A DNA stretch of 64,000 nt from Lepidodermella squamata (GCA_047495785.1 JBLDXI010000019.1:1302001-1366000), one strand, 5' to 3'; positions 26,535-62,603 are shown, counted from the first letter of the stretch. Notes: generated by a model not told the origin, from the letters alone. Program-made: numbers and translations.

Positions 26535-28406
26535 TTGAATCGGGTTCGCAAATCTGACATCAACCCATCACTATCGCGACGCGAACGAAAACGCTTGCGA
26601 AGAAAGATGCGGCGAGCCAAGTACCAGAAACAAGTCAAAGAGGCTGGACGAGACCCTCGCAAGCTGTGGCGGGTCATCAGTGACTTCAGGCCAAAGAAGA
26701 AAACTCAGGGATCATTTCAGGGATTGGACAAAGATAAGTCGCTGCTGAAGGCAAATGAGTTCAATTCATTCTTTGCGCAAGCCGGTTTTAAAGTTGCTCA
26801 AGCCCTATCGAAAAGCCTGAACTTCGTGAGACTGCGCACTGGCTACAACAAGTTTGATTTTCGATCGATATCGCGTGCTGAGGTTGAGGCAGCTATTGAC
26901 AAGCTGTCGTACAAATCGACAACTGGGTACGATGGAGTGCCGGAATGCGTCATCAAAATGGCCAAGTCTACTTTAACTCCTTGTTTGCTTAAACTTTTTA
27001 ACTTAGCGATTGCCGAACGAACCTTTATATCGGACTGGAAGGCATCAATTGTAACTCCGCTTCACAAATCCGGCAGCAGATTGGAGACAGCCAATTATCG
27101 GCCGATTTCAATCACGTCACCAGTTGCTCGGACGTTCGAACGGTGTCTGGCGTTTCAGCTTAAAGGTCACTTGGCTAACTTCTGGTCTTCTGCGCAACAC
27201 GGTTTCCGAGAGAAACACTCGACGGACACGTGCGTTGCCGAATTTACCGAAAACTGGCGGCGGTCCATGTACGAAGGCAAGGTTGTGGGCGCTGTCTCAA
27301 TCGATTTGTCAAAGGCCTTTGATACGCTGAATCACGACGCAATCATAGAGTCATTCAAAAGTGCTGGATTATCACCTGATGCCCTTCTATTACTTCGAAA
27401 CTACCTCTCAGATCGCCGTCAAGCAACCAGGATCAATAACGAATTGTCTTCGTTTGAGAGCGTTGGTCTGGGCGTACCTCAGGGGTCCGTTCTCGGACCG
27501 CTAATGTTCACCGTTTATGTGAATGAATTGTCGACGGTTGTAGAGCGATGTGGCTTGAAACAATATGCTGACGATATTACTATTTATTTTGCAAGTAGGA
27601 ATGTGAACGAACTTCGCGCTGTCTTGCAACTTGAGATGAATCGAGTTTGCCACTGGCTTCAAGGCAACTCGTTGGCTGTTAATGGCAAAAAGTCACAGTT
27701 TATGTTGCTGAAGTGCGCTAAGCCTGATGCTCCGAATTTCTCGATCACCATCGGCGACACTGTTGTTAGGCCTGCAAACGTCATGATAACTCTTGGGTTT
27801 ACAATCGACTGCAAGCTCACGTTCAATCGTCACATCAAAGGTGCAAAAAGCAAAGCAAGGAAAGGTTTGTTCGCCCTGAAACTCGCAGCTAAGTTCATCG
27901 ACCGAAAGACAGCAGTAATGATGGCCAACGGTCTCGTGTTCAGTCATCTCAACTACGGCGACTTGACTCTTGGACAAGCTGCGCCGACTACGTTGGATCG
28001 GCTTCAGACAACTCAAGACCGCGCTGTCCGAATTATCTGTGGCGCTCATCCTCTGGCCGACGCAGCGCCTCTTCGTCATCGCCTCGGCTGGGTCGACGTA
28101 AATCAAAAGCACGCTATTCATCTGGCTACCTTTCTATGGAACTGTCTACACCAACAAGCACCCACTGTCATGCAGTCATGGTTCCAGCTGAACGATCCCT
28201 CGAACTATGAAACTCGCCACTTTGAACCGATGTTTAAACCAACGTACTCAAAGGTTCGCGGCATGCTGAGCATGAGCTACCGAGGCCCTGATCTATGGAA
28301 CCAGCTCCCGGTCAATGTCCATCAATCTGAAACAGCTCAGACCTGCAGGGAAGCCACCTACTCGCACTTCTACGAAAAAAATGCTGCAAAATTGAAATTA
28401 AAATGA
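26535..28406 (+). CDS. LINE reverse transcriptase (N-truncated ORF2)
   Basis: NYRPIS, QHGFR, DLSKAFD, GVPQGSVLGP, YADD, LWNQLP. Confidence 0.92.
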   Translation: MNRVRKSDINPSLSRRERKRLRRKMRRAKYQKQVKEAGRDPRKLWRVISDFRPKKKTQGSFQGLDKDKSLLKANEFNSFFAQAGFKVAQALSKSLNFVRLRTGYNKFDFRSISRAEVEAAIDKLSYKSTTGYDGVPECVIKMAKSTLTPCLLKLFNLAIAERTFISDWKASIVTPLHKSGSRLETANYRPISITSPVARTFERCLAFQLKGHLANFWSSAQHGFREKHSTDTCVAEFTENWRRSMYEGKVVGAVSIDLSKAFDTLNHDAIIESFKSAGLSPDALLLLRNYLSDRRQATRINNELSSFESVGLGVPQGSVLGPLMFTVYVNELSTVVERCGLKQYADDITIYFASRNVNELRAVLQLEMNRVCHWLQGNSLAVNGKKSQFMLLKCAKPDAPNFSITIGDTVVRPANVMITLGFTIDCKLTFNRHIKGAKSKARKGLFALKLAAKFIDRKTAVMMANGLVFSHLNYGDLTLGQAAPTTLDRLQTTQDRAVRIICGAHPLADAAPLRHRLGWVDVNQKHAIHLATFLWNCLHQQAPTVMQSWFQLNDPSNYETRHFEPMFKPTYSKVRGMLSMSYRGPDLWNQLPVNVHQSETAQTCREATYSHFYEKNAAKLKLK

Positions 28407-32501: not shown

Positions 32502-33509
32502 TCAATTTTTAGGATATTTATAAAACCCTTCGCCGGTTTTTCGGCCCAGTTTGCCCTCGGCAACTAATTTTGTAAGCAAAGGCGAGAGGAGATTTTGTCC
32601 TGAATCGGCATCGAAGCGCCTTATCCATTCATCGATGATCAATTTAGCCGTGTCCAATCCGATCAAGTCGAGAAGTTCAAAAGGCCCAATCAAATAACCA
32701 GCTCCGAGTTTCATAGCTGTGTCAATGTCTTCCTTTGACGCATCCCCTCTTTCATACATTTGAATCGCCTGAAGAAATGTTCACCTTGTAAATGAATTTA
32801 GTTGGATATTCGGAATTACCTGGGTGATGTAAGGAATCAGCAATCGATTCACGATAAAACCAGGAGTATCTTTGCAGTGAACGGGTTTCTTGCCAAGAGC
32901 GGTTACAAAACTTGCCAATGATTGCTTTGTTTCTGGGCTCGTTTCTACCAAACCTACAACCTCAACCAGGGGCATGATAGGAACAGGGCAGAAAAAATGA
33001 AGACCGCCGCATCGTTCCTTTTTCAGTCCTTTCGTGATATCCCCAATCAACAAGGAAGAAGTATTGCTTGCTAGGATGCAATCAGTTTTCACGGTTTTGT
33101 CCAACATTTGAAATAATTCCTGTTTAATATCCATTTTCTCTGGAATGGCCTCAATAACCAGGTCAGCTGAAGAAATCGATTTTTTAGCGTTGCCAACGCC
33201 CTCAATGAATGTCAACTTAGCCAACGCATCATTTACAAATGAATCCGCCTTAACAGTCTCACCTTTGAACTGTTTCTTTGCGCTAGTTTTGAGCCCAACT
33301 TCAATTCCTGACCGGATTGATTTCAGGAGTTCATCATTTCGGTCAACAATAGCAACAGTGTGTCCGGTAGCTGCGGCAGTTTGAGCTATGCCAGCACCCA
33401 TGAATCCTCCTCCAATGACCACAATCCTCGAAATTTTGCTCGAGGAAACAAGTGATCGAGAGAACGGGCCAGCTATTTGCCTCCGAATCAATTTCCGGAA
33501 TAAACTCAT
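32502..33509 (-). CDS. HADH: Short-chain 3-hydroxyacyl-CoA dehydrogenase, divergent paralogue, 2 exons
   Basis: [57 protein letters not shown]. Confidence 0.93.
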
Positions 33510-33658: not shown

Positions 33659-34673
33659 TCACTTCTTGTATTTGTAAAATCCTTCGCCGCTCTTTTTGCC
33701 ATATTTCTTCTCGGTCACCAACTTGTTGAGCAGGGGCGAAGTTGCCGATAATACCGGGTCTGATTTGAAGCGCTTAGCCCAGCCGTCAGTGATGAATTTC
33801 GATGTATCGAGTCCAACGTAGTCGAGTAGTTCAAATGGACCCATAGGATATCCGGCGCCCAACTTCATCGCAGTGTCGATATCTTCCTTAGAGGCATCAC
33901 CTCGCTCGTGCATTTGGATCGCCTATCGATTCGATGAATTTAGCTAAATAATTGTGTGAATTGCATTTAATTACCTGGATCATATACGGAATCAACAGGC
34001 GGTTGACAATAAAGCCAGGAGTATCTTTGCATTGAACTGGGACTTTGCCGAGGGCTTTCACAAAATCGTTCAAAGCCATCGTTGTATCAGGGCTGGTCTC
34101 CTTCAGGCTAACGACTTCGACAAGCTTCATCATCGGTACAGGGTTGAAGAAGTGCAGACCACCACATCGGTCTTTCCGCTCCGGAATTTTCGCGAGAATT
34201 TCGGCGATGGGCAGCGATGAAGTATTGCTCACAAGAATCGCTTCTTTCTTAACTGTTTTGTTCAACTCTGCAAACAAAGGCTGTTTCACCTCAAGCTTTT
34301 CGGTGATGGCTTCGATAACCAAATCCGTGGTAGAAATGGCAGATTTAGCGTTGCTCAAGCCTTCGATAAACTGTAATTTCGATAGCACGCCCTTGACCAT
34401 CTTTTCAGCAGCGGCTTTATCTTCGGCGTGCTTTTTCTTAGCAACACGCTGCAGACTCGCTTCAATGCCGGCGCGGCTAGTTTTCAAGATATCACCACTC
34501 TGATCAACAACAGCGACGCCATGGCCGGTGGCAGCTGCTACCTGAGCAATGCCAGCCCCCATGAGGCCTCCTCCAATGACGACGATGTTTGAAATCTTAG
34601 CACTTGACGCTAGCGAGCGACTACATATTCCAGCAACGTTTGATGATGATGATTTCAAGATTGCCGATAGCAT
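33659..34673 (-). CDS. HADH: Short-chain 3-hydroxyacyl-CoA dehydrogenase, 2 exons
   Basis: [48 protein letters not shown]; mitochondrial-type presequence. Confidence 0.96.
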
Positions 34674-44277: not shown

Positions 44278-47200
44278 TCAGAACCCAGTGAGAGCACCAG
44301 AACCGCCAGATGAGTCAAAATCAGGTGGCAAATAAGATCCGCCAACTGGGCCACCGGCAGCTCCTTGACTGCCATCACGATTGTATTGTCCCTTGTAAAT
44401 TTTAGCCAGCTTTCTTCGAGCTTCCTCCAACTCCCTTTGCTTTCTCATCACTTCTTCGTGCATGTTGATAATCTGAAAAATAGCAATATTACATTTAAGA
44501 TTTGGAGATAATTGCAGGAAAAATTAATAGAAAACGAAACACTCCACTTGAAAATCTATTGATCGGTTACAACTTTGACTTGATCATTCTCATGCTCTAG
44601 TGAAAAATCAGCGGATAAAACAATGACACGAATAGCCAATATGGCTTGAAAACGGGTTTTTTGTTGTTGTACAGTTTAAGGCATCGGACGAACATGCACT
44701 AGAGGGCACATTAAACGCTGAACTATGGGGTAATTGATTTTGTTCTCAATTAATTTTCGAACTTTAAAGGAACGATTAAAGCGTAACATGATTTGAATAA
44801 ATAAGATTCTGCCAGGCCACGATGATGAAAGCTAGCTTGTCACAACACGACAATAAAAATCGGGTGGCTACTGTAGGCACGCTCAACATCAAGTCGGTTC
44901 TCACTTATTCGTCATCGTCCCGAAAGACAGTGTTGCGCGAGCCGCCGTAAAAGTAATAGACGAGGTAATGAGGACAATCGACAAGCGTGCATAAAATCCA
45001 CGCATGCTCGGCTTCCTCCTCGACCGAAAGCGGTCGCGGCGGTAACATCGCCGCATTCGGCGCGGTTTGCCTCAAAACCACACTTTCGGCGGTGACCAGT
45101 TGCGAGACACTGGGCCTAGCTAGGAGAAGACTCTCGCGGTCGACCTGATGATACACGCGATGACGACGAAGGAAGGAGGAGGAGAAGTTGCATACAGATT
45201 ATGATAATTAATATCAACATTTTAAATAAAATTAGAAGCAAGCTCGGTTTTATTTCTGCAAATAATTCCAGCGCAATTTTCAGCCAATTTTTCGAAGGTA
45301 AAAATGAAACGATAGGTATATAAAAACGACTAGAACTGAATAATGACGTCGGTAAAAAACCAGCCACGAGGCTAGGCTGAAAATCAAAAGTTACATACCT
45401 GTGTCAAGCCACCCACTCGAGTTCTACCCAGCAGTTCTTCGGCGGTTGCATCATCTGCGTCGTTGCTGCCAGTAATCAATCTTTGAACAGTTGCTACCAA
45501 TACTTCGGTCGCGCCTTTCACAGCCTGACCAGCGGCTTGGAGCCTGTTATACGTGGTCGAGTTGGGATCTGCTTTTACACGGCAAGCCAGGACCAGCTGG
45601 GTTGTACACGATGCAACTTGGCGAGCAGCTGCAATCAACCTCTCCTCGGATCCGGTTCCACGTAAAAGTTGATCCGCAGATTCGAAAAGATTCTGAGTAG
45701 CCTCAGCGACCAATTTCGCCGCGGAAATAAGTCCTTGAGACCACTGACTGTCATCAGCTGCATACAACTGTTGCCGGCTTGACGGTATCATCTGAAGTTG
45801 ATAGGGAAAATCAATACTCATTCAATGAAAATAAAGCAAATACTTACCCGTCCCTGAGCCATCAATTCCCGCTGAGCTTCTGACGCTGACTTCACCAAAT
45901 CTTGAGTTGTGCCTGCTAATGTTCGACACGCCTCAATGATCTGCTCGTGGACGGTCAAAACGGCCACGGCACTGTCGTCTTGCCCACCGGATGCATCTGA
46001 ACCTCTTCGAGGTGGTTGCATTTCTGTGAGGCGGCGTTCGACGACCGAAATTTTCTTTGACGCGACCATCAGCTCTCGCTCAGCTGTCTGAACTAATTGC
46101 TCAGATCGCTCCTCATCAGTCTGAGGAGCGCTCGCACCGGTAACAGCAGCTACCATGGACGCCAAATTAGCCGGGCGGGGTGGCGGGGGAGGACGTTGCT
46201 GAAAGATCAAATAAATCAATTTGACGACTGCTGTTGAACATTTTTAGTGCGATCCAACTTATGAAAACGGGACGATTGCAATGAAACAAATTTTAAACCA
46301 AATTACATGCAGATGTGCGTTTTTTTAACGACAATAACATCACATTTAACCTTCAAATAACCGGTAAGATGTGGTGGATAAGGGTTCGAAAGTTGCTTGT
46401 TGTAATACCAGGAAGCAGTTGCCCCAACTGACGAGACTTTACCCTCGGGGAAAACCGGGTGAGAATTTGATTTCAACTTTGGTGGTGGCTTTCTTTTAAC
46501 CGTTTTGACTTTAAAGGAGCCGTAGCCCCAAATTTTGTACTGCCTCATTGGTCTATTTGCAGGACATCTTAGGCTAGCGTAGAATCGCATCTATACGCAC
46601 AATTCATTTTCACCAGAACATCAGAAGCTGTTCATCAAAGATCATTAAAGTAAACGAACCTGCTGAGAGGGGGAACTCTCGACCTTGTGAACCGGGGTAG
46701 AAGGCGCAGGGGACTGCACGTTGGAAGAAGAATGTTCGTAATTCTCAGACCGCAACGTTCCCAATACATTTTTGATACGCGACGATAGTTGCGAAGAGTG
46801 CGAAGAATAAGCCTGATACGCCGCAGTATCAGCCGGGTCCGATTGTGAGATGAGAGATTTAGCTGTTTCAAGCATACGACAACCCACGTCAAGCGTATTG
46901 ACTAAACTGATGACAAATTTCTGCTGTTTTAACTCAGGCGATGAGTTTTCCTGGCTCATCGCGACAGAGCGAACGAAATCTACCAAAGCGTCAACAGAGC
47001 CGAGAAGTGGAGCGGCTGCGTTGTGAAGAGTCACAATATCAGGCGGGCCGACTTCCGGTTGTTGGTCTTTGATGGCTTGAACGAGTTGGGTCGAGACAGT
47101 GGCAACGTCTTTAGCAAGCTCGACATAACGACGCCGCACGGAATCATCCGCGCTTCGGCCAACTGCTGTCTTGCAGATATCACAAATCGATTTAGTCTGG

Positions 47201-50200
47201 CGGGCCACCCGGCTAGCAATGTTGACCAGTTCATCCGGGGTTGGCACCTGACCGACATTTACGCTCAAAGGCGCACATGCGTCTTGCATGAGAGATCTGG
47301 CGCATAGAAGCGAGTCAATTGAGGCAGCAAGGGCGGCTGGGCCCGGGCCTGTAGGCGAGGCGATCGGGCTTTGCTGAGACGACAAAATCGCATAAGTCTG
47401 CAGTGAGTTGAGCGAGAGACCAGCGAGAGAACCGGAGAACTGTCGAACAGCGTCGATAAATTGAGGTACATTACTATCCTTAGCATGGACCGAGACTAGA
47501 GCGACAGCATCGCCCAGCAACCGGGCGTCGTTCATGGCGTGCTGAAGAGAGACCGATGCATCCTGGTTTGACTGCGGGATCGAGATTTGACCCTGAGACA
47601 ATTCGTTTCGCAACAAATTCAGCCGGGAAATTGCGACTCCACACTCGTCAATCGCAGGCCCAGTCGGCGGCTTGAACTCATGGACCCGTTGAGCCATCAC
47701 CACTTTCTCACCGCCTCGGTCAACGGCTTGAATTGGGCCGGTAGAAACGGCAATAGCTCGGATTTGCTCGGCGGTTTGTTTAACCGAGTCGTTCAAACTA
47801 ACGGCTTGCTGCGGAGATTGCGGTGCGACTGAGGCAGTTTCGATCATTTTGGCAGTAGCATCGGCCAACTGCTTCGCAGCAGCTAATAAGCGATTCTTCT
47901 GCCACTCATCGGTTTCAGCGCTTGCCTTGTCCTTAATCGCCATTATCAACATGCTAGTCATCTGGGCAAGGGTGTTTGCTTCAGCGGCAATTTCGTGAGA
48001 ATCATCGGCGTGGATTACTCGCTCAGTAGCAGCAATTACTGCACTAGTATGCGTTGGCTTCTTGGGCGGAGGTGGGGGCGGCTTCGGCTTAGCGACAGCA
48101 GGAGCTTCGCTTTGGCTGGTCGGCTTTTCCTTCTCAACTTTTGGCTTCGAATCATTATTATGACCGTTACCGTTACCGTTACCGTTCGACGAGCCGTTTG
48201 ACGCACCGTTATTTGTTTCATGCCCATTTTTATGCTCATCAGGTGAGTGCATGTGAGTTGTTATGTGACGGACCAAATCGGCAACAGCCTTACCAACTGA
48301 CCCGGCAGCTTCTTGAACATGAACTACAGCTTGTTCATTGCCACATTCACGCTCGGCGGTCGAGACTAGGCGGTCAGCTACGACTCCGACCGCTCCGCAG
48401 CTCCTTACGAGCTGCTCTCGGCACCTTTGATCAGTCATAAGCGACGACTGAACGACCTTGGTGACTGCAACTAGTTGAGAAACTGCGAGAGCGCATTGAG
48501 TTGCCGAGTGGATAATTCCGTTTTTCGACTCATCAGAGTCGCATTGGGCGGAAGCAGCTTTGGATGCTAAGACTAACTTGGCAGTTGCGGAAGATACCGC
48601 TCGAGCTAGGGCGAGAATCTGCTCCTGAAAAGCGCGCTCTTCGTCTAAAATAGGTCCATTCACCGTAACGACAAGATCGCCACTCGCTTTTCCGACTACG
48701 CTAGCCGCTGCCCATAGTTTCTGCCGTCTTTCATCCGGAGTTTGATCCGACGAGCCGTTGACTCCTAGCGGCCTAGCAGCGATGAAAAAGTCGTTGAACG
48801 AATTGGTCAACGTCCGGGTGGCAGAAATCACTGTGTCTCGATTATGCTCTGATTCTTGAACAGCTGCGAAATTCCTCGCATCCTCAGCCAGGGGTTGAGC
48901 GTGCATAGCGATGGCAACTACAGCGTCGGTGACAACAGCGCATTCAACCACAGCAGGGCTGGAAATATCGGCAACTCCGGCAATATTCGCATTCGCGACA
49001 GCTGTTGCAGAAACCGCCTGGGCAGCCGCGGCACTCATTGCGGAGACACGGCCTGTCAGCTGCACCAACGTAGCTGATTTCAATTCACTCCAGTATCGCT
49101 CATCCCTGTGCTCGATTTGCCGCATTAACGGCAGATTCTCACGCAAACGACGATCAGCCGCACCGAACTGGTCTAGGCCATCGGCAATGGCGTCGTCTAA
49201 CGCTTGTTCCTCAGGTGTAAGGTTAGATGTGGGTTGCGTCAGTGAAATCACCATTTCTCGAATTTGCCCGGCTTCATGAATGATTTTCTGTCTCGATTCT
49301 TCGTCATTCTGTCTTTCAGCGTATAATTTTGCCGATGCTACTAAACGAGTCGTAGCTTCAGCCAACTGACGAGCAGCTGAGAGCAAACGCTGTTTCTGTT
49401 GATCATCACTCTCCTCGGCTACAATTCCACGCAAGGCTACAATTAACTGACTAGCAGACTGGGCTAAACCTCCGGCGCAACGAGCGGTTTCACGACTGTT
49501 GTCACTCCTTTGACCGGGCTCGGCATGGGCCTGTTGAATAATACGCTCCGAGGCCATAACAACAGCCGATTGTAAATCCTGAAATTCGGGCATTTGTTTT
49601 TCCTGACTTTCCTCCTCACGCTTTCTAGCATTTCCGTGAACATGTCCGAGAAATTCCTGAAGGCACAGTGAAACTTGATTAGCAGCCTGCAACATTTCCG
49701 TAACCATCCGTTCATCGGCACAGTGCCGCGGCGCCATATCAGCCAGCTTTTCAACACTGGCCGAAACTTGGGCGCCAACATTTGATAACTGAGTTTGACA
49801 TCCTTGGCTATCCGCAGCCGACGCGATAACAACCTAGAAAATATTAAAACAAATTGTCAAGAAAATGTAACTTGACTTCTGGGTTATGTAACCTTTGTAA
49901 CAGCGACTAGTTGAGAGGTGGATAAAGCACATTGTGTAGCGGCTTGAATAACGGAGTTTTGGTTCGAAACCGTATCGCATCGGTTGGCAACCGCCTTGGC
50001 GCGTAACACCAGTTGAGCGGTAGCGTTTGCCACGGCTTTCGCGAGCGCAAGCAGATGTTCCTGAGATGAAAAACAAGCAGTGAAAACCCACAGAAATTGT
50101 GTATCTAGAATGAAATACCTGATATGACTTCTCGTCCGAAGACACGCCAACACCAGAAGCAGCTTTCAAAACGTCAGCAGCTTCGCCAACTTTCGTAGCA

Positions 50201-53170
50201 GCGGTGAGCAATTGTTGACGAGGCTGCAAAGAAATTGAAGAAACTTAACATCTTGCTCATAAAAAAAATTCAGTTTTTGAATTATTTTTCCATTTCAGAA
50301 TGTACGAAATCGTCAAAACTTTTCGGTCCGCCCGTACGAAAATCATCATTAAAATTTGATCAAAAATTTTCAAGGCGTTTTTAATTACCTCAACATTAGC
50401 GGGATGAGCGGCGCGAAACATGTCGTTGAACGCAGAAGCGAGCCGACGAGCCGCGGTGAGCAAATTGCCCCGCGTATCACCGTTGCCGTTGTTGCCATCT
50501 TCAACAGAGTCATTCGAGAATAGCAGCAGGCCGCGAACATCGTCGCACAAAGGCGGCATCTCGCGCGAAATAGCACTGACCGCCTGCGCGACATTAACGC
50601 AGTGATGCTCATCGGGCGCCTGGCCATCACTGGCAGCCGTAAACGTCGTCGTCATTATCGATGCCGTGGCCGCGCTCATCTCCGACAGCCGGCCTGAAAC
50701 GTTCTGGCGGTGGACTGAAATGATGGCCTGGCGGCGCGCGTAGTCAGCCTGTATGAAACAATAGAAAAGGACAACATTAATCTCAATTCATCAGGAACCA
50801 TCAAACACGCATTGAAAATGGTTAATTATTACAAAATTAATTCCAAGCAGATTTATTTCAATAAGGCAATAAACAGTTGTAGCACTTGAAATGAAATAAT
50901 GAGCGCAATTTTAAGCCGAATGAAAATAACTGAATTTTGAAGCGGGTTGTGTCATCTTATTTTCGAGTTCACTTAGACGAATAGCCCTAAACAGATAAAC
51001 CAGCCCCTCAACGTATCAATAATTTGCCACGCTAATTAAATTAAGGAGGAACGTACCGCGTCAGTAGCCGGCGGATGAGGACGGATGTTTTCGGCGTCGA
51101 CCAGGAAGCGCTGAGCATCGTCCATGATCGAAATGCCGTTGTTGAAAGTTGTAGCTAGGGCTTGATGAGCAGGCGAGCTCGGTGTAGGCTGTGGCGGTTC
51201 GATATCAACTGAGGCGGGCGTGTTCGGGACAGCCGATTGATCACCAGCCTGGGCTCCGTCAGTCGTATCAGTTGTTGCCGGTTGACCTTCAGTGGCCGGG
51301 GATGGCTTCAATCGCCGCAAGGTAGCCGCTAATTCTTTCGGCGTTAGAATAGTCGCACGATGCGGTTGGATCGTATCAACCCTCGGGGCGTGGGGTTCGC
51401 GGCTCAAAGTCGACGTCGGCGAATATTCAACACCTTGCTTCTTCTTCGAGATGATCTCAGCGTAGCCAGCAAGCAGCCGAGCGATTTGTTCACCTTCTTG
51501 CGTTTGAACCGAATAAGGCCGACCGTATTCGCCAAAGTCGAGAGTGAAGTAGTTGGTGCGAACTTCCCATTGCTTGATCTTGGTTAGCGGCCATTCTTGA
51601 AGAACTTCGCGATTCGAAGGCTTGATACGAACAACAGCGTCGCGGGTAATACCGAGCAAAATAGGCTGAAGCTTTCGCTTTTCTTCGTTCTTTTCCTGAA
51701 CACAAGAGAAAGAACGAAAATTAATGATTGAAAGTGGTCATAAAAATTGGGCTTATAAATCCCGAGCGGCCACGTGGCGACGGCGTGGTCGCAAAAAATC
51801 ACGCTAATTGTGTTGCTAAAAATAAAAATCGCGTGCAATAAGGTTATGTTGGCAATAAAAACTGATGCACGCAAAAAATAGCCTCAGCAGACCGCCCAAG
51901 AAAAAAAGGACGGAATACAAATGATTTATCAGCCTAGACATTTAAGGTCGCCCGAAAATGAGCGAGGGAATATACAATTCAAGCCAATATTTCACGTAAT
52001 AGTTTCTGATTTAACAGACAGCAGGATATCTCCCGAGTTTTCTATTAAAACGACGCGATTTTTTTCGTGATTTTCCTTCTCAACATCAGTATTAATTCCC
52101 ATTGCGATAATCATTAATTCGTATTCGCTTCGTGTAAAATTGATATGTGATGTGAAACAAACCCTGGCCAGAAATATAGCGATGCCATAGGTGCGTAACT
52201 GACGGCATGTTTGGACGTATTTGAGGCGCGCGTCCACTTGAACGATCTCGCCCAGCTCTTTGTATCGTTCGTAAATCTCACGTTCCAGACCCTTGCCTCT
52301 GAACTCCTTCGGCAAATACTCGTCCCAGTTCACTTGCTCGAGCACGTCGCCTTTGACGTCAAAGCCGCGATCAATGTAAAGCTGAAGACCGGCTAGCATC
52401 GTCGCCTCCTTTTGCGTAACAGGGTAGCGACCGCTTGTAATGCCATCGACGCATTGCGCGTATAGCAAAGTCAACTGAACAGGGTCGCGTGTATCAACAT
52501 TTCTGTCTGATAAGAAAAATTTTCGCCGCAAGACAAGTGGCTGTAAGTCCAAGTCTTTGTAAAGCCCTTGTTCGCGCAGCGTTTGAGCATGATTCAGCCA
52601 ACAAATCGTGTCATCAGTTTTCAATTTATTCCGCAGCTTCTCCATTTTCGAATCTTTCGATAAAGTTGCGGTAGACCCGGCGGCGGAGTCAGGCCTGTCA
52701 TAGCTAGACATTCCACCGCGTGACATGGTGCCAGTTTTCATGAGAGTACCGGTCTTATCCTCGTAGCTCGGCGAATCGCGAACTAGCGAGTATTCCTCAA
52801 AATTAACAATGCCCATTTTTGAGCAAATTTCCAGCATCAACTCGCCGACAGTTTTGCTCTCGTCGAGTTCCATTTTCTTCCTAGTTCCATCGAGAGTTTT
52901 GATCGAGATCACAAGAAATTTCTTCTTATAAATTAAGGTAGTGTCCTGGCCGATCATTTGATAATAGCCGACCGTCCTCGAAGGCTCGAGCCATAAACCT
53001 TTCGAGGGATCGGATTTGTCCGGTAGAAATAAGCCGTATTTCCTGGCGTCATTTTCGGGAATATTTTCACTCGCGATGGCGCAAATATCTCGAACAAGGT
53101 CTGTGTCTTTGATGTTAAATGTTTTCTGAAGACGATGGTCTTCGTAATTGACGTTGAGGCGAAATAACAT
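44278..53170 (-). CDS. TLN: Talin-family protein with rearranged rod, 9 exons, ~2130 aa
   Basis: Exons 53170-52163, 51695-51057, 50748-50389, 50223-50119, 50060-49893, 49833-46660, 46198-45848, 45791-45399, 44472-44278, all phase 0; FERM head (LRRKFFLSDRNVDTRDPVQL), I/LWEQ region (QWSQGLISAA), dimerisation helix (RKQRELEEARRKL). Confidence 0.95.
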
Positions 53171-58578: not shown

Positions 58579-61500
58579 TCATTCGATTTCTACCAACAGA
58601 TCGTCGCCGGCAATTTTCTGACCACTTGAGACAGCGACGTTTTTAATCTTGCCGTCGATGGGGCTAGAAACCACCATTTCCATTTTCATGGCAGAAATAA
58701 CGGCAATAGCTTGACCTTTCTTAACCTGATCGCCAACTTTGACCTGAAGATACAACATGTCCAGTTAACTGACCAGAAATATGTTATGAGAAAAAGCTAA
58801 ATTACCTTAACAGCCAAGACGTTGCCAGGCATGGGAGAGCCAACGCTGCCGGGATGTCCTTTGGTCGCTTTTGGATGAATTTTCACATCTCCGGTAACAG
58901 CCTTGTCCTTCATTAAGATTGAACGCAGCTGCCCGTTGAGCTCAAAGAAAACTTCTCGCTCGCCAGTGCGTTTGTCAAGCTCAGAAATAGCGAGTGGCTT
59001 GATGTACAAGGTCTTGCCCTTTTCGATATCAACTAACAAATCTTCGGCAATTTTCGGGCCAACAAAGAATACACGGGTGTCCAAGCAATCAACCGGGCCA
59101 TATTTATTGCGGAAAGCGAGGAATTCCTCCGTTTCCTTCGGGTATAGCGCAGCGCTAATCACATCGACAGGACGGACGTGGCCATACTTCTCGACGAGAT
59201 TATCCTTTAGTTTATCAAAATCGATTGGTTTCAGGGATTTGAATGCATCAGCGTCGTCATATTTCGGCTTGCCACGTAGAATCTTAGTACGCAGCGGTTC
59301 GGGATATCCGAATGGTGGGGGGCCGATCAGACCTTGCATGAATTCAACCACGCTAGACGGGAAGTTAAGCTCATCGGCACGAGCCATGACGTCAGCTGCA
59401 GACAATTTGTTTTGAACCATGAATTGAGCCATATCACCGACAATTTTCGAGGACGGTGTGACCTTGATCAGATCTCCAAGGAGCTGGTTAGCGTCAATAT
59501 ATTTTTGTTTGACTTCTTCGAAACGATCACCGAGGCCCAGTGAGAAAGCCTGGAAGTGAAGGTTGGTATATTGACCACCGGGGATTTCGTTCAAATAGAC
59601 GTCAGCATTGCCGGTCTTCATCGTGACAGTGCACTCGAATGGAGCATAAAGCTGACGGGTGTTTTCCCAGTACGCGGAATAGCTGATGACCTTATTCAAG
59701 TCCAGTTTCGTGTCCAGAGGGGTGTTTTTCATGGCAGCAACCACGGCGCCCATGCTCGGTTGAGAAGTCATACCAGACATGCTGTCAACTGCAACATCGA
59801 CGACATCAGCGCCAGCCTCGGCAGCGGCAAGTATGGTAGCGACTCCAGCACCGGCAGTGTCATGAGTATGCCTAAACAAAGTGTCACGCGATACTTAACA
59901 TTAGGTAATAATTAGAAAGCTTACAAATGAAGGGGCATATCAGGGAAGCGATTGCGAAGCTGAGTGAACAGAATTTTCGCAGCTGCTGGCTTGAGCAGGC
60001 CAGCCATATCCTTAACAGCCAGAATGTGGGTGCCAGCTTTCACCAACTCATCGGCGACTTTCATGTAATAATCCAATGTGTATTTGGTGCGGGTTGGATC
60101 AGCAACATCGCCCGAGTAGCAGATAGCTGCCTCAACGACTCCGCCAGCCTGACCAACAGCCTCAATACCAGTGAGAATCGATGGGATATAGTTCATCGAA
60201 TCGAAAATGCGGAAAATGTCCATGCCAGACTTGACTGATTGCTCGCAAAACTTGGTGACAACGTTCAGCGGGTAGTTGGTATAACCGACGGCGTTGGCAC
60301 CTCGAAGAAGCATTTGAAATGGAACGTTGGGGACTTGTTCACGAAGCTTTTCAAGCCTAAAATAAATCGTTTGGGATTTGAGCAAGAAATTCGAAATGTA
60401 TGGACTTCTCACCTTTCCCACGGGCATTCATGCAGGAATCGCAGCGCAACGTCAAAAGTAGCACCGCCCCAGCATTCAAGAGACAACAAGTCGTTGAAGT
60501 TATGAGCGACGAATGGCGCAACATTCAATAAATCATGGGTGCGAACGCGAGTTGCAAGCAAGCTCTGAAAAATAATTGTATCAGCTAAATTGGGCTTGAG
60601 AATCTGAAGTTTACCTGGTGAGCATCACGCATTGTTGTGTCGGTGATGAGAAGACCGCGGTTTTTACGAATGGCCTTCGCAAATTCAGCAGGTCCACGTT
60701 CTAAAATCAGCCAAATGTGGTAAATCCTGTGGTAAATTAAGATTAATCTCTCAAACCTTTCAGGATCTTTCGCCAGCCCGAAGGAACGATAGCATTCGGT
60801 TCGTGTTTCGGAGCTTCAATTTTGATGTTGGCGGGTTTCAGCGGAGTGGCAAGAGGCGTTTGCGGTCCGTTGACCATGACTTCGGCCAAGTAGTTCAGAA
60901 GCTTCTGGGCACGATTCTGGCTCGCTTCGAAAACGAAAAGCTGAGGATTCTCGTCGATAAAGTAAGTGTCGACACTATCTTTGCGGAATTTTTCATTTCG
61001 GAACACGTTCAATAAGAACGGGATGTTGGTTTTGACGCCTCGAATACGAAATTCCCGAAGGGCTCGAACCATCTTAGCACAGGCACCTTCGAAAGTCTTC
61101 TCTCGCGCAATGATTTTGCACAGCAAGGAGTCATAAAAAGGCGAAATCACAGCTCCGGCAAAGGCAGAAGCACCTAAAGTTACAGAATTATAGATCGAAA
61201 AAAGCTACGAGCAGGGAGAAACTTACTGTCAATACGGATGCCCATGCCCTCACCGCTTCGGAATACTTCAATTCTTCCAGAATCGGGTTGGAAACCCCTC
61301 GCAGGATCTTCAGTGGTCATTCGGCACTACAAGATGCGTTTAACGTAAAAATATTTCCACGGTTTCATGGCTTACTTGAATGGCGAAACCGGTTGTCTTG
61401 ATGTTGTCTTGCACCAAACCCAAATCGCGCAACGACTGACCCTCGGCAACACGGATTTGAGATTGAACAAGGTCAACACTGAAGAATAGGCGTAATTGAA

Positions 61501-62603
61501 AAAAAATGACAATTTATAGAAAATTACCCTGTAACCTCCTCAGTACAAGTGTGCTCAACCTGCAAGCGCGCGTTCACTTCGATAAAGTAATGATTTCCTT
61601 CTTGATCAAGGAGGAACTCGCAAGTTCCAGCATTTTCATAGCCGACATGACGGGCCAGCTTGACCGCATCAGCAGTCAACCGATCACGAATCTTCGAGTC
61701 CAAGCGCGGGGCTGGAGCGATTTCGACAACTTTCTGGTGACGCCGCTGAACCGAGCAGTCACGTTCGTACAAGTGAACAACATCGCCAGTACGATCACCG
61801 AGAAGTTGAACTTCAATGTGGCGCGGGCGTTCGACGAATTTCTCGACAAACATTGCACCATTTCCGAAAGCAGCCTTCGCCTCGGAAGTAGCTCGGTTGA
61901 AGTTTTCTTCCAACTCATCCATTTTACGAACAACACGCATGCCTCGACCACCGCCTCCATAAGCTGCCTTGAGGATGATCGGAAACTTGTGTTTATCAAC
62001 AAAGGCCTTGACTTCATCGACAGTGGTGACGGGGGTGGCAGTTCCAGGAACGCACAAAACTCCAGCTTCAATCGCGGATTTCCTAGCCTCGATCTTATCA
62101 CCCATACGGTGCAAAACAAGAGGAGGCGGTCCGATGAAAATAATTCCGGCTTGATTGCACGCTTTGGCAAATGCAGCCTGTTCAGACAAGAAGCCATAAC
62201 CCGGATGAATAGCGTCAACATTATTTTCAAGGGCAACACGAATCATTTCAGGGATTGATAAGTAAGCGGCGACTGGGGCCAGGTTTTTGCCGACCAAGTA
62301 AGCTTCATCAGCTTTGAATCGATGCATGTGCTGAATATCTTGCTCACTGTAAACAGCAACAGTTCGGATTCCCATCTCGGTAGCGGCGCGGAAAACTCGA
62401 ATTGCGATTTCGCCGCGATTAGCCACCATGATTTTCTTGATCGGTTTGTAAATCGGCTTGAAGTGTTCATATTCGGCGAGCGGATTCAGCGTAACGCCGC
62501 TGTTGAACGCCGGTGAACGAGAGGCGAATAGGCGCCGAGAAATAGTTGACGCCAACACCGTGTAATCATGGCACAGCGACGCTGGCTTCCTCAAAATTCT
62601 CAT
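58579..62603 (-). CDS. PC: Pyruvate carboxylase, mitochondrial, multi-exon
   Basis: [33 protein letters not shown] and biotin-attachment SAMKME. Confidence 0.98.

What the first reader, a model, noticed from the sequence alone, without database searches (positions are those of the whole stretch)
44278..53170. Talin with a duplicated R1-R2-R3 mechanosensor module and seven rod domains missing
Seen: the rod has two homologous runs. Copy 1 (~51180-49240): PAHQALATTF, EHLLALAKAVANATAQLVLRAK..ATQCALSTSQLVAVTKVV, QRLLSAARQLAEATTRLV. Copy 2 (~49225-47740): TPEEQALDDAI, EQILALARAVSSATAKLVLASK..ATQCALAVSQLVAVTKVV, NRLLAAAKQLADATAKMI. Within the same exon it passes straight to R7/R8-like sequence (DECGVAISRL; RRRYVELAKDVA), then via a Pro linker to R13 and the dimerisation helix. 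The intervening 461-nt intron cannot hold R9-R12. Known: canonical talin has 13 rod bundles (~2540 aa); R1-R3 carry force-exposed vinculin sites, R9 autoinhibits F3, R11 is part of the second integrin site. Inference: FERM-R1-R2-R3-R1'-R2'-R3'-R7/R8-R13-DD would be a shorter talin, perhaps without autoinhibition, with a doubled low-force switch, i.e. a novel adhesion mechanosensor.
Basis: partly seen in the sequence, partly recalled or inferred. Interest (0 to 1): 0.85.

Follow-up and report, generated by a model that had tools for sequence, protein, structure and literature searches.

The report
Rewired short talin, R1-R3 doubled
An unidentified short-intron animal has a transcribed, conserved talin gene (the protein linking integrins to actin) whose rod has nine helical bundles instead of thirteen, with the first three present twice and seven absent, which contradicts the published view that talin's domain order never varies.

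Summary
A nine-exon gene on the minus strand (53170-44278, all introns phase 0) encodes a 2130-aa talin. Its order is F0-F3 head, R1-R2-R3, a second R1'-R2'-R3', R7 with R8 inserted, a proline linker, R13 and the dimerisation helix.

- **Duplication:** the two R1-R3 modules align colinearly (32% identity, E 2e-50). Each domain scores best against its own canonical counterpart, except copy-1 R3, which scores almost as well against R10.
- **Missing domains:** nothing resembling R4-R6 or R9-R12 exists anywhere in the 64-kb window.
- **Transcripts:** RNA-like contigs of one public run skip the predicted introns exactly, including the 461-nt intron that joins R7 to R13.
- **Conservation:** a relative about 52% identical, on two independent metagenome contigs, has the same order.
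- **Age of the duplication:** a tree places it inside this lineage, before the two species split.
- **Selection:** a 98%-identical strain differs mostly at synonymous sites (25 to 4).

Function is inferred, not shown. It is probably a working integrin-actin mechanosensor that cannot use the known R9/R12 autoinhibition and has two copies of the R3 low-force switch.

The species is unidentified, and I could not test whether a canonical talin also exists elsewhere in the genome. I rate it a new variant of a known kind. The scan's only other note on this is the same stretch read again.

The parts
44278..53170 (-). Whole talin coding region. Exons: 53170-52163, 51695-51057, 50748-50389, 50223-50119, 50060-49893, 49833-46660, 46198-45848, 45791-45399, 44472-44278. 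All introns are phase 0. Product is 2130 aa.
   Evidence: model, GT/AG sites. (the RNA-like run X1 shows joints for the introns at 50388-50224, 49892-49834, 46659-46199 and 45847-45792, and a loose end that matches the 51057/50748 join).
51438..53158 (-). FERM head F0-F1-F2-F3 (aa 5-422), followed by an unstructured linker (aa 423-507, 51437-51183)
   Evidence: Pfam FERM_f0, FERM_N, FERM_M and IRS-type PTB. Domain HMMs F0F1 145 bits, F2F3 220 bits.
50170..51182 (-). R1, copy 1 (aa 508-687; spans two introns)
   Evidence: R1 HMM 78 bits, E 6e-25. Pfam Talin_middle. PDB 5nl1/1sj7.
49636..50136 (-). R2, copy 1 (aa 699-826; spans two introns)
   Evidence: R2 HMM 100 bits, E 7e-32. Aligns to talin-1 from residue 722.
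49240..49614 (-). R3, copy 1 (aa 834-958), four helices
   Evidence: R3 HMM 45 bits, but R10 scores 42 bits. PDB best hit is 2l7a (R3), E 2.5e-7, with no R10 hit. The relative's copy scores R3 41 against R10 22 bits. AF2 predicts 4 helices.
48670..49233 (-). R1' (aa 961-1148), five helices, no intron
   Evidence: R1 HMM 52 bits, E 5e-17. Pfam Talin_middle, E 1.7e-15. AF2 predicts 5 helices.
48256..48642 (-). R2' (aa 1158-1286), four helices
   Evidence: R2 HMM 87 bits, E 1e-27. PDB 1sj8 alignment reaches chain residue 307. Foldseek 1sj8 TM 0.69.
48049..48255 (-). Disordered Asn/Gly- and Pro-rich insert between R2' and R3' (aa 1287-1355), containing a run of seven prolines followed by KKP. A poly-Pro run is also present in the relative.
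   Evidence: (pLDDT below 30). X2 has an in-frame 6-nt insertion here.
47743..48048 (-). R3' (aa 1356-1457), four helices
   Evidence: R3 HMM 60 bits, E 2e-19. Pfam Talin_VBS2 51 bits. PDB 2l7a E 1.4e-10. Foldseek 2l7a TM 0.76, rmsd 1.8.
46744..47658 (-). R7 with R8 inserted (aa 1486-1790)
   Evidence: Aligns to talin-1 residues 1358-1653 and to 2x0c, E 1e-20. R7R8 HMM 99 bits.
46199..46659 (-). 461-nt intron at the place where R9-R12 would be
   Evidence: Skipped in an X1 contig (depth 23.6, 119 nt on the shorter side). X1 depth is zero in the bin that lies wholly inside the intron (46344-46532), while the DNA run X2 covers it. No talin-like ORF. No conservation with L001.
45480..46087 (-). 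R13 / I-LWEQ actin-binding domain (aa 1856-2039), preceded by a Pro-rich linker (aa 1791-1855)
   Evidence: R13 HMM 166 bits, E 7.5e-52. Pfam I_LWEQ E 5e-36. Alignment.
44365..45419 (-). Dimerisation helix (aa 2060-2102), split by the 926-nt intron 8
   Evidence: DD HMM 46 bits, E 2.6e-15. Alignment.
44905..45144 (-). Conserved coding-like segment inside intron 8, a possible alternative last exon (79 codons plus stop). Not shown to be transcribed.
   Evidence: 82% nucleotide identity to L001. A 19-residue core is identical in both and all 7 nucleotide differences in it are synonymous. Both have a phase-0 acceptor.

Best explanation
This is a real, expressed talin gene of a poorly sampled animal lineage, under purifying selection, with a remodelled rod.

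Shown here:
- The head (F0-F3) and the C-terminal actin-binding and dimerising end (R13, DD) are canonical.
- Between them lie R1-R2-R3, a diverged second copy R1'-R2'-R3', and R7 with R8 inserted.
- R4-R6 and R9-R12 are absent.
- The duplication arose inside this lineage, before two species now about 52% identical split.
- Copy 2 has evolved faster than copy 1.

Inferred mechanism:
- The protein still links the integrin tail and membrane (F3, F2) to actin (R13-DD dimer) and carries force through a shorter chain of nine bundles.
- Under load the two four-helix R3-type bundles should open first and expose vinculin-binding helices. The sequences matching the known vinculin-binding helices of R1, R2 and R3 are kept in both copies. 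By my count from memory, potential sites stay near or above the canonical number despite the shorter rod.
- R9 and R12, which shield the FERM head in closed talin-1, are missing. The known autoinhibited form therefore cannot exist, and control must come from elsewhere or be absent.
- Also lost are the second integrin site (R11-R12), the R4 part of the central actin site, and the R10 and R11 ligand sites.
- R7/R8, the hub that binds KANK and LD motifs, is kept.
For: - Gene model with consensus splice sites and 2130 aa.
- Pfam: FERM_f0, FERM_M, IRS-PTB, Talin_middle twice, Talin_VBS2 twice, I_LWEQ.
- PDB mapping: R1R2, R3, R7R8 and nothing else at E < 0.001.
- Best hit per segment with domain HMMs from 8 canonical talins, sliced on boundaries mapped through PDB chains.
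- Internal repeat E 2e-50.
- AF2 helix counts for R3, R1', R2' and R3' are 4, 5, 4 and 4, followed by about 9 to 10 helices for R7R8. Foldseek finds 1sj8, 2l7a and R7R8.
- RNA-like contigs skip the predicted introns, including the 461-nt one.
- Relative contigs L001 and L002 are colinear, with the same domain order.
- Tree: the c1 pair and the c2 pair each have 100/100 support, and all four form one clade at 99/98.
- 25 synonymous against 4 non-synonymous differences to strain X2. X2's single-base indels fall only in introns, and its one exonic indel is 6 nt.
- F3, R13 and DD alignments are conserved.
- Vinculin-binding-type helices are conserved in both copies.
- Engineered talin-1 lacking R4-R12 still supports polarisation and migration in talin-null cells (PMC5472591). 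R9 and R12 shield the FERM head (PMC6856716).
Against: - No binding, force or localisation data exist.
- X1 is only presumed to be RNA (its record does not say), and contigs cannot exclude rare isoforms.
- Copy-1 R3 scores almost as well against R10 (45 against 42 bits).
- The AF2 model is low confidence overall (mean pLDDT 57) because the alignment has 3 rows.
- The clade uniting the two copies could be helped by long-branch attraction.
- I could not search the rest of the genome, so a canonical talin may coexist and do the classical job.
Confidence: 0.8

Rival explanations
1. The architecture is real, but this is a lineage-specific second talin (a sub- or neo-functionalised paralogue). A canonical 13-bundle talin elsewhere in the genome would do the classical job.
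For: The talin is unusually diverged: R1-R3 is 38% identical to amphioxus, while scallop against amphioxus is 61%. A housekeeping enzyme in the same window is only ordinarily diverged, at 55-58% to fish, echinoderms and molluscs. Talin duplications are known in vertebrates and Dictyostelium (PMC6032930). Nothing here tests the rest of the genome.
Against: Most invertebrates have one talin gene (PMC6032930). None of the 150 best library hits is sister to this clade as a canonical paralogue would be. No other talin note exists for this genome in the scan. These last two are weak, because neither the lineage nor ordinary genes are well covered.
Confidence: 0.3
2. It is a gene-model or assembly artefact. 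The rod exons for R4-R6 and R9-R12 exist but are missing or collapsed in this assembly, or are used in other transcripts.
For: Only one RNA-like data set was available, held as contigs, and contigs drop rare variants.
Against: The R3 to R1' and R3' to R7 transitions lie inside one open 3174-nt exon. The R7 to R13 joint is seen in an RNA-like contig. A DNA run of a second strain is colinear. Two independent metagenome assemblies of a distant relative have the same order. No such ORF exists within 64 kb.
Confidence: 0.03
3. The second module is not a duplicate of R1-R3 but a strongly diverged R4-R6 (or another set of rod bundles) that resembles R1-R3 by convergence among helical bundles.
For: Talin rod Pfam models cross-hit heavily. 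Talin_IBS2B matches nearly every segment.
Against: Domain-specific scores for the three segments are R1 52, R2 87 and R3 60 bits, against at most 15 bits for R4, R5 or R6. The helix counts of 5, 4 and 4 fit R1-R3, not the 4, 5 and 5 I recall for R4-R6. The copy 1 to copy 2 alignment is colinear at E 2e-50. The tree joins the copies at 99/98.
Confidence: 0.03
4. It is a decaying gene copy that no longer functions.
For: None specific. Copy 2 evolves faster than copy 1 (56% against 69% identity to the relative).
Against: The 2130-codon frame is intact. Synonymous to non-synonymous differences are 25 to 4. Single-base indels fall only in introns. The frame is kept over about 50% divergence in the relative. 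Spliced transcripts are present.
Confidence: 0.02

Closest known systems
Canonical talin (vertebrate talin-1/2, Drosophila rhea, C. elegans TLN-1; represented here by Branchiostoma talin, P0004)
   Same: F0-F3 FERM head, unstructured linker, R1-R3, R7 with R8 inserted, R13/I-LWEQ and the C-terminal dimerisation helix. The helices matching the vinculin-binding helices of R1-R3 are conserved.
   Different: It has nine rod bundles instead of thirteen. R1-R3 is present twice. R4-R6 and R9-R12 are absent. There are two conserved proline-rich linkers, one between R2' and R3' and one between R7 and R13. R9 and R12 are missing, so the published autoinhibited form (PMC6856716) cannot form. The review PMC6032930 describes the arrangement as unvarying in all available talin sequences.
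Engineered truncated talin-1 deltaR4-12 (residues 1-913 fused to 2296-2541; PMC5472591)
   Same: The head plus R1-R3 is joined to R13-DD without R9. That construct still let talin-null fibroblasts polarise and migrate, which shows a rod of this kind can work.
   Different: This one is natural, keeps R7/R8 and carries a second R1-R3 module. The engineered form accumulated only weakly in adhesions.
Dictyostelium TalA/TalB
   Same: This is a precedent for lineage-specific talin variants. TalB has an added villin-headpiece-like C-terminal domain (PMC6032930).
   Different: According to that review, those variants add residues beyond the universal arrangement. They do not delete or duplicate rod bundles.
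TLNRD1 (talin rod domain-containing protein 1)
   Same: It is a protein built from R7R8-like bundles. Foldseek lists it among the weaker matches.
   Different: TLNRD1 has no FERM head, no R1-R3 and no I/LWEQ domain, so this gene is not a member.

Membership tests
Talin | N-terminal atypical FERM head with F0 plus F1-F2-F3 (F3 is an IRS-type PTB) | tested here: met
   Pfam FERM_f0 E 7e-16, FERM_N, FERM_M E 6e-18, IRS E 7.5e-22. F0F1 and F2F3 HMMs 145 and 220 bits.
Talin | Rod of 4- and 5-helix bundles containing vinculin-binding helices | tested here: met
   Talin_middle twice, Talin_VBS2 twice. Bundle-wise helix counts. Aligned helices. Actual vinculin binding was not tested.
Talin | R8 inserted into R7 | tested here: met
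   A single 305-residue alignment to 2x0c and to talin-1 residues 1358-1653. R7R8 HMM positions 2-298 of 300.
Talin | C-terminal I/LWEQ (THATCH, R13) domain plus dimerisation helix | tested here: met
   I_LWEQ E 5e-36. R13 166 bits, DD 46 bits. Alignment.
Talin | Thirteen rod bundles R1-R13 in the canonical order (called unvarying in PMC6032930) | tested here: not met
   No segment has R4, R5, R6, R9, R11 or R12 as best hit. R10 is only a near-tie for copy-1 R3. R1-R3 occur twice. The same holds in the relative.
Talin | Autoinhibition by R9 and R12 docking on the FERM head | tested here: not met
   R9 and R12 are absent from the gene and from the transcript-like contigs. Whether another bundle substitutes was not tested.
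Talin | Binds integrin beta tails, actin and vinculin | not testable with these tools
   Only sequence conservation of F3, R13 and the vinculin-binding-type helices was seen.
TLNRD1 | Stand-alone R7R8-like protein without FERM or I/LWEQ | tested here: not met
   The FERM head and I/LWEQ domain are present in the same spliced gene.

The most novel reading that the evidence does not exclude
This rewired nine-bundle protein is the only talin of a whole, little-sampled animal lineage. If so, the 13-bundle order, R9/R12 autoinhibition, the second integrin site and the R4 part of the central actin site are dispensable for animal integrin adhesion. Evolution would then have compensated by doubling the R1-R3 force-switch and vinculin-recruiting module. 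A further possibility is a second isoform that swaps the dimerisation helix for a conserved hydrophobic tail.
Probability: 0.4. Interest if true: 0.8.

Novelty: new variant of a known kind. Interest (0 to 1): 0.62.

Why it matters
Talin is treated as a fixed ruler and code of 13 force-operated switches. A major review states that the arrangement does not vary in any available talin, and argues from this that every domain is universally needed (PMC6032930). A natural, conserved and expressed talin that drops seven bundles and doubles three is a counter-example.

It offers a test of several questions that have so far been approached only with engineered truncations such as deltaR4-12:
- which rod domains are truly essential;
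- whether R9/R12 autoinhibition is dispensable;
- how rod length sets adhesion architecture;
- what a doubled low-force R3 switch does to force sensing and vinculin recruitment.

Tried and rejected
- **Self-BLAST of the whole model** printed nothing, twice. I replaced it with piecewise BLAST.
- **Pfam rod models** cross-hit too much to assign domains; Talin_IBS2B hits almost everything. I replaced them with domain HMMs built from 8 canonical talins.
- **Species identification** failed. The HADH neighbour gene's closest named hits are fish, echinoderms and molluscs at 55-58%, roughly equally distant. Rfam found nothing in the window.
- **Search for more relatives** found little. The word-indexed library gave only the one metagenome protein. 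The JGI metagenome scan by alignment and a back-translated lineage-specific peptide pattern both gave nothing.
- **Search with the head exon** for a second talin of the lineage gave only distant hits of 43% identity or less.
- **Scan notes for another talin in this genome:** none. This is uninformative.
- **Hidden exons:** none in introns 1, 2 and 6. Intron 8 holds a conserved coding-like segment, reported separately.
- **The intron-8 peptide:** no Pfam family and no usable Atlas hit.
- **RNA support for the intron-8 segment** could not be obtained. My single read-laying run started at 45399, just beside it.
Full report
**Observation.** The region holds a eukaryotic gene on the minus strand. 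Reading the three minus frames and the junctions gives nine exons with GT..AG introns, all in phase 0. Introns are short (56-59 nt for three of them; the longest is 926 nt).

**What the parts are.** Pfam finds the talin head (FERM_f0, FERM_N, FERM_M, IRS-type PTB), Talin_middle twice, Talin_VBS2 twice and I_LWEQ. Against solved structures the 1058-aa exon matches only three talin pieces at E < 0.001:
- R1R2 (1sj8, exon residues 263-527);
- R3 (2l7a, residues 591-693);
- R7R8 (2x0c and talin-1 1358-1653, residues 725-1029).

The upstream exons match R1. The start of the large exon matches talin-1 722-896, which is the end of R2 plus R3.

Pfam's rod models cross-hit too much to assign domains. 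I therefore took eight full-length canonical talins from the library search (named ones include Branchiostoma, Schistocephalus, Rhabditophanes and the fungus Blyttiomyces). I mapped domain limits on the Branchiostoma protein through single-domain PDB chains, aligned the eight and built one HMM per domain. Best hits along the model are:

| Domain | Model aa | Bits |
|---|---|---|
| F0F1 | 5-204 | 145 |
| F2F3 | 216-422 | 220 |
| R1 | 508-687 | 78 |
| R2 | 699-826 | 100 |
| R3 | 834-958 | 45 |
| R1' | 961-1148 | 52 |
| R2' | 1158-1286 | 87 |
| R3' | 1356-1457 | 60 |
| R7R8 | 1486-1790 | 99 |
| R13 | 1856-2039 | 166 |
| DD | 2060-2102 | 46 |

No segment has R4, R5, R6, R9, R11 or R12 as its best hit. 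The one ambiguity is copy-1 R3, where R10 scores 42 bits. Three things favour R3. The PDB search prefers R3 and finds no R10. The relative's copy scores R3 41 against R10 22 bits. The predicted structure has four helices there, as R3 does by my recollection, while R10 has five.

The AlphaFold model of the large exon is low confidence overall (mean pLDDT 57, three-row alignment). Its helix counts per segment still fit: 4 for R3, 5 for R1', 4 for R2', a disordered insert, 4 for R3', then about 9 to 10 for R7R8. Foldseek returns R1R2 (TM 0.69), R3 (TM 0.76, rmsd 1.8) and R7R8 structures.

**The duplication.** Copy 1 against copy 2 gives one colinear alignment: 32% identity over 428 columns, E 2e-50. 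Other pairings of rod segments give E about 0.02. A six-frame scan of all 64 kb with the domain HMMs finds talin-like ORFs only in the nine exons.

**Is the model what is transcribed?**
- Two public runs hold the stretch.
- X1 behaves as RNA. Its contigs skip 45847-45792, 46659-46199 (the 461-nt intron; depth 23.6, 119 nt on the shorter side), 49892-49834 and 50388-50224.
- A loose end at 50749 carries the end of exon 2.
- X1 depth is zero in the bin wholly inside the 461-nt intron. No skip lies inside the large exon.
- X2 behaves as DNA of a strain about 98% identical. It is colinear through introns.
- X2's two single-base deletions fall in introns. Its one exonic indel is 6 nt, in the Asn/Gly repeat.
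- Of the 40 listed X2 differences, 11 are intronic, 25 synonymous and 4 non-synonymous.
- Caveats: the X1 record does not say it is RNA, and contigs cannot exclude rare isoforms.

**Relatives.** The exhaustive library search gave one close hit: a 1102-aa ORF that is 53% identical and matches exon residues 1-1047 in a single stretch. Everything else is distant, with no high-scoring hit above about 35% identity. That ORF lies on two independent ENA metagenome contigs. tblastn of the model on the 7.6-kb contig L001 is colinear: F3 and linker, R1, then one ORF covering model aa 668-1807, then R13 about 325 nt later, then the dimerisation helix. Its domain order is R2, R3, R1', R2', a proline-rich insert, R3', R7R8. 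No R4-R6 or R9-R12 is found anywhere on the contig. The architecture, including the direct step from R7 to R13, is therefore conserved across about 50% protein divergence.

**Age of the duplication.** I concatenated R1, R2 and R3 match columns from 24 other talins and from the two copies of each of the two species (27 modules extracted; the window's copy 2 added by hand). The tree was built with IQ-TREE under LG+C20+F+G4 PMSF.
- Window copy 1 pairs with relative copy 1 (100/100).
- Copy 2 pairs with copy 2 (100/100).
- The four form one clade (99/98) among bilaterian talins.

The duplication is therefore lineage-specific and older than the split of the two species. Copy 2 evolves faster (56% against 69% identity between species). 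Long-branch attraction could inflate the support for the four-way clade.

Copy 1 carries four introns and copy 2 none. This could fit an origin of copy 2 from a processed copy, or later intron loss. I did not test either.

**How it probably works (inference).**
- F3, R13 and the dimerisation helix align well with canonical talins.
- The helices matching the vinculin-binding helices of R1, R2 and R3 are well kept in both copies.
- The protein can therefore plausibly bind integrin and membrane at one end and actin at the other, dimerise, and expose vinculin sites under force.
- Two R3-type four-helix bundles lie in series. R3' is uncoupled from R2' by a disordered insert of about 70 residues.
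- From memory, R3 is the lowest-force switch and contains a threonine belt. Polar residues at two of those positions are visible in both copies. I did not verify the numbering.
- R9 and R12 shield the FERM head in closed talin-1 (PMC6856716). Both are absent here, so that form of autoinhibition cannot occur.
- An engineered talin-1 lacking R4-R12 still allowed talin-null fibroblasts to polarise and migrate (PMC5472591). A rod like this can therefore be functional.

**Comparison with what is known.** The review PMC6032930 states that the domain arrangement is unvarying in all available talin sequences, and infers that each domain is universally required. The only exceptions it mentions are extra C-terminal residues in Dictyostelium and Drosophila. 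My paper searches found no report of a natural talin with duplicated or deleted rod bundles. The library searched is limited to open-access papers and preprints.

**Open points.**
- The species is unidentified. The neighbouring HADH gene is 55-58% identical to fish, echinoderm and mollusc enzymes alike, and its closest hit is another unnamed metagenome protein. The lineage therefore lacks annotated proteomes in the library.
- I could not search the rest of the genome. A canonical talin paralogue may exist, which would make this a specialised second talin rather than the only one.
- The head-exon search, two metagenome scans and the scan's notes gave nothing either way.

**Verdict.** Function is inferred. 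This is a new variant of a known kind, of clear interest to the adhesion field, tempered by the unknown species and the untested question of a paralogue.

Noticed in passing
window 45144-44905 (minus strand), inside talin intron 8; L001:5722-6024: A conserved coding-like segment on the talin strand. A 19-residue hydrophobic core (AWILCTLVDCPHYLVYYFY) is identical in the relative, and all 7 nucleotide differences within it are synonymous. Both species have a phase-0 CAG acceptor in frame and a stop soon after. The relative's ORF has no ATG, so it must be spliced. It may be an alternative last exon giving a talin without the dimerisation helix, or an exon of a nested gene. No Pfam family and no usable Atlas hit. 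RNA support was not obtained.
   Followed up: partly
window 48255-48049 and 46743-46088 (minus strand): There are two proline-rich linkers, one between R2' and R3' and one between R7 and R13. Both have poly-Pro runs that are also present in the relative. Canonical talin rods have none that I know of. They are candidate profilin, EVH1 or SH3 docking sites or flexible spacers. The first also has an Asn/Gly repeat that varies by 6 nt between strains.
   Followed up: partly
window 51057-49833 compared with 49233-47743: Copy 1 of R1-R3 is interrupted by four phase-0 introns, and copy 2 by none. The relative keeps the two introns around R1. Its ORFs run uninterrupted across the positions of the window's introns 4, 5 and 7, so it appears to lack them. 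All eight introns of the gene are phase 0.
   Followed up: partly
window 32781-33509 and 33897-34673 (minus strand): Two adjacent ORFs each encode a 3-hydroxyacyl-CoA dehydrogenase NAD-binding domain, apparently a tandem duplication.
   Followed up: no
window 26535-28406 (plus strand): A 623-aa ORF with a reverse-transcriptase domain (RVT_1, E 2e-31), probably a retroelement.
   Followed up: no
window 58797-59879 and 61524-62603 (minus strand): Large exons of a pyruvate-carboxylase-type gene: biotin carboxylase N-terminal and ATP-grasp domains, and the conserved carboxylase domain.
   Followed up: no
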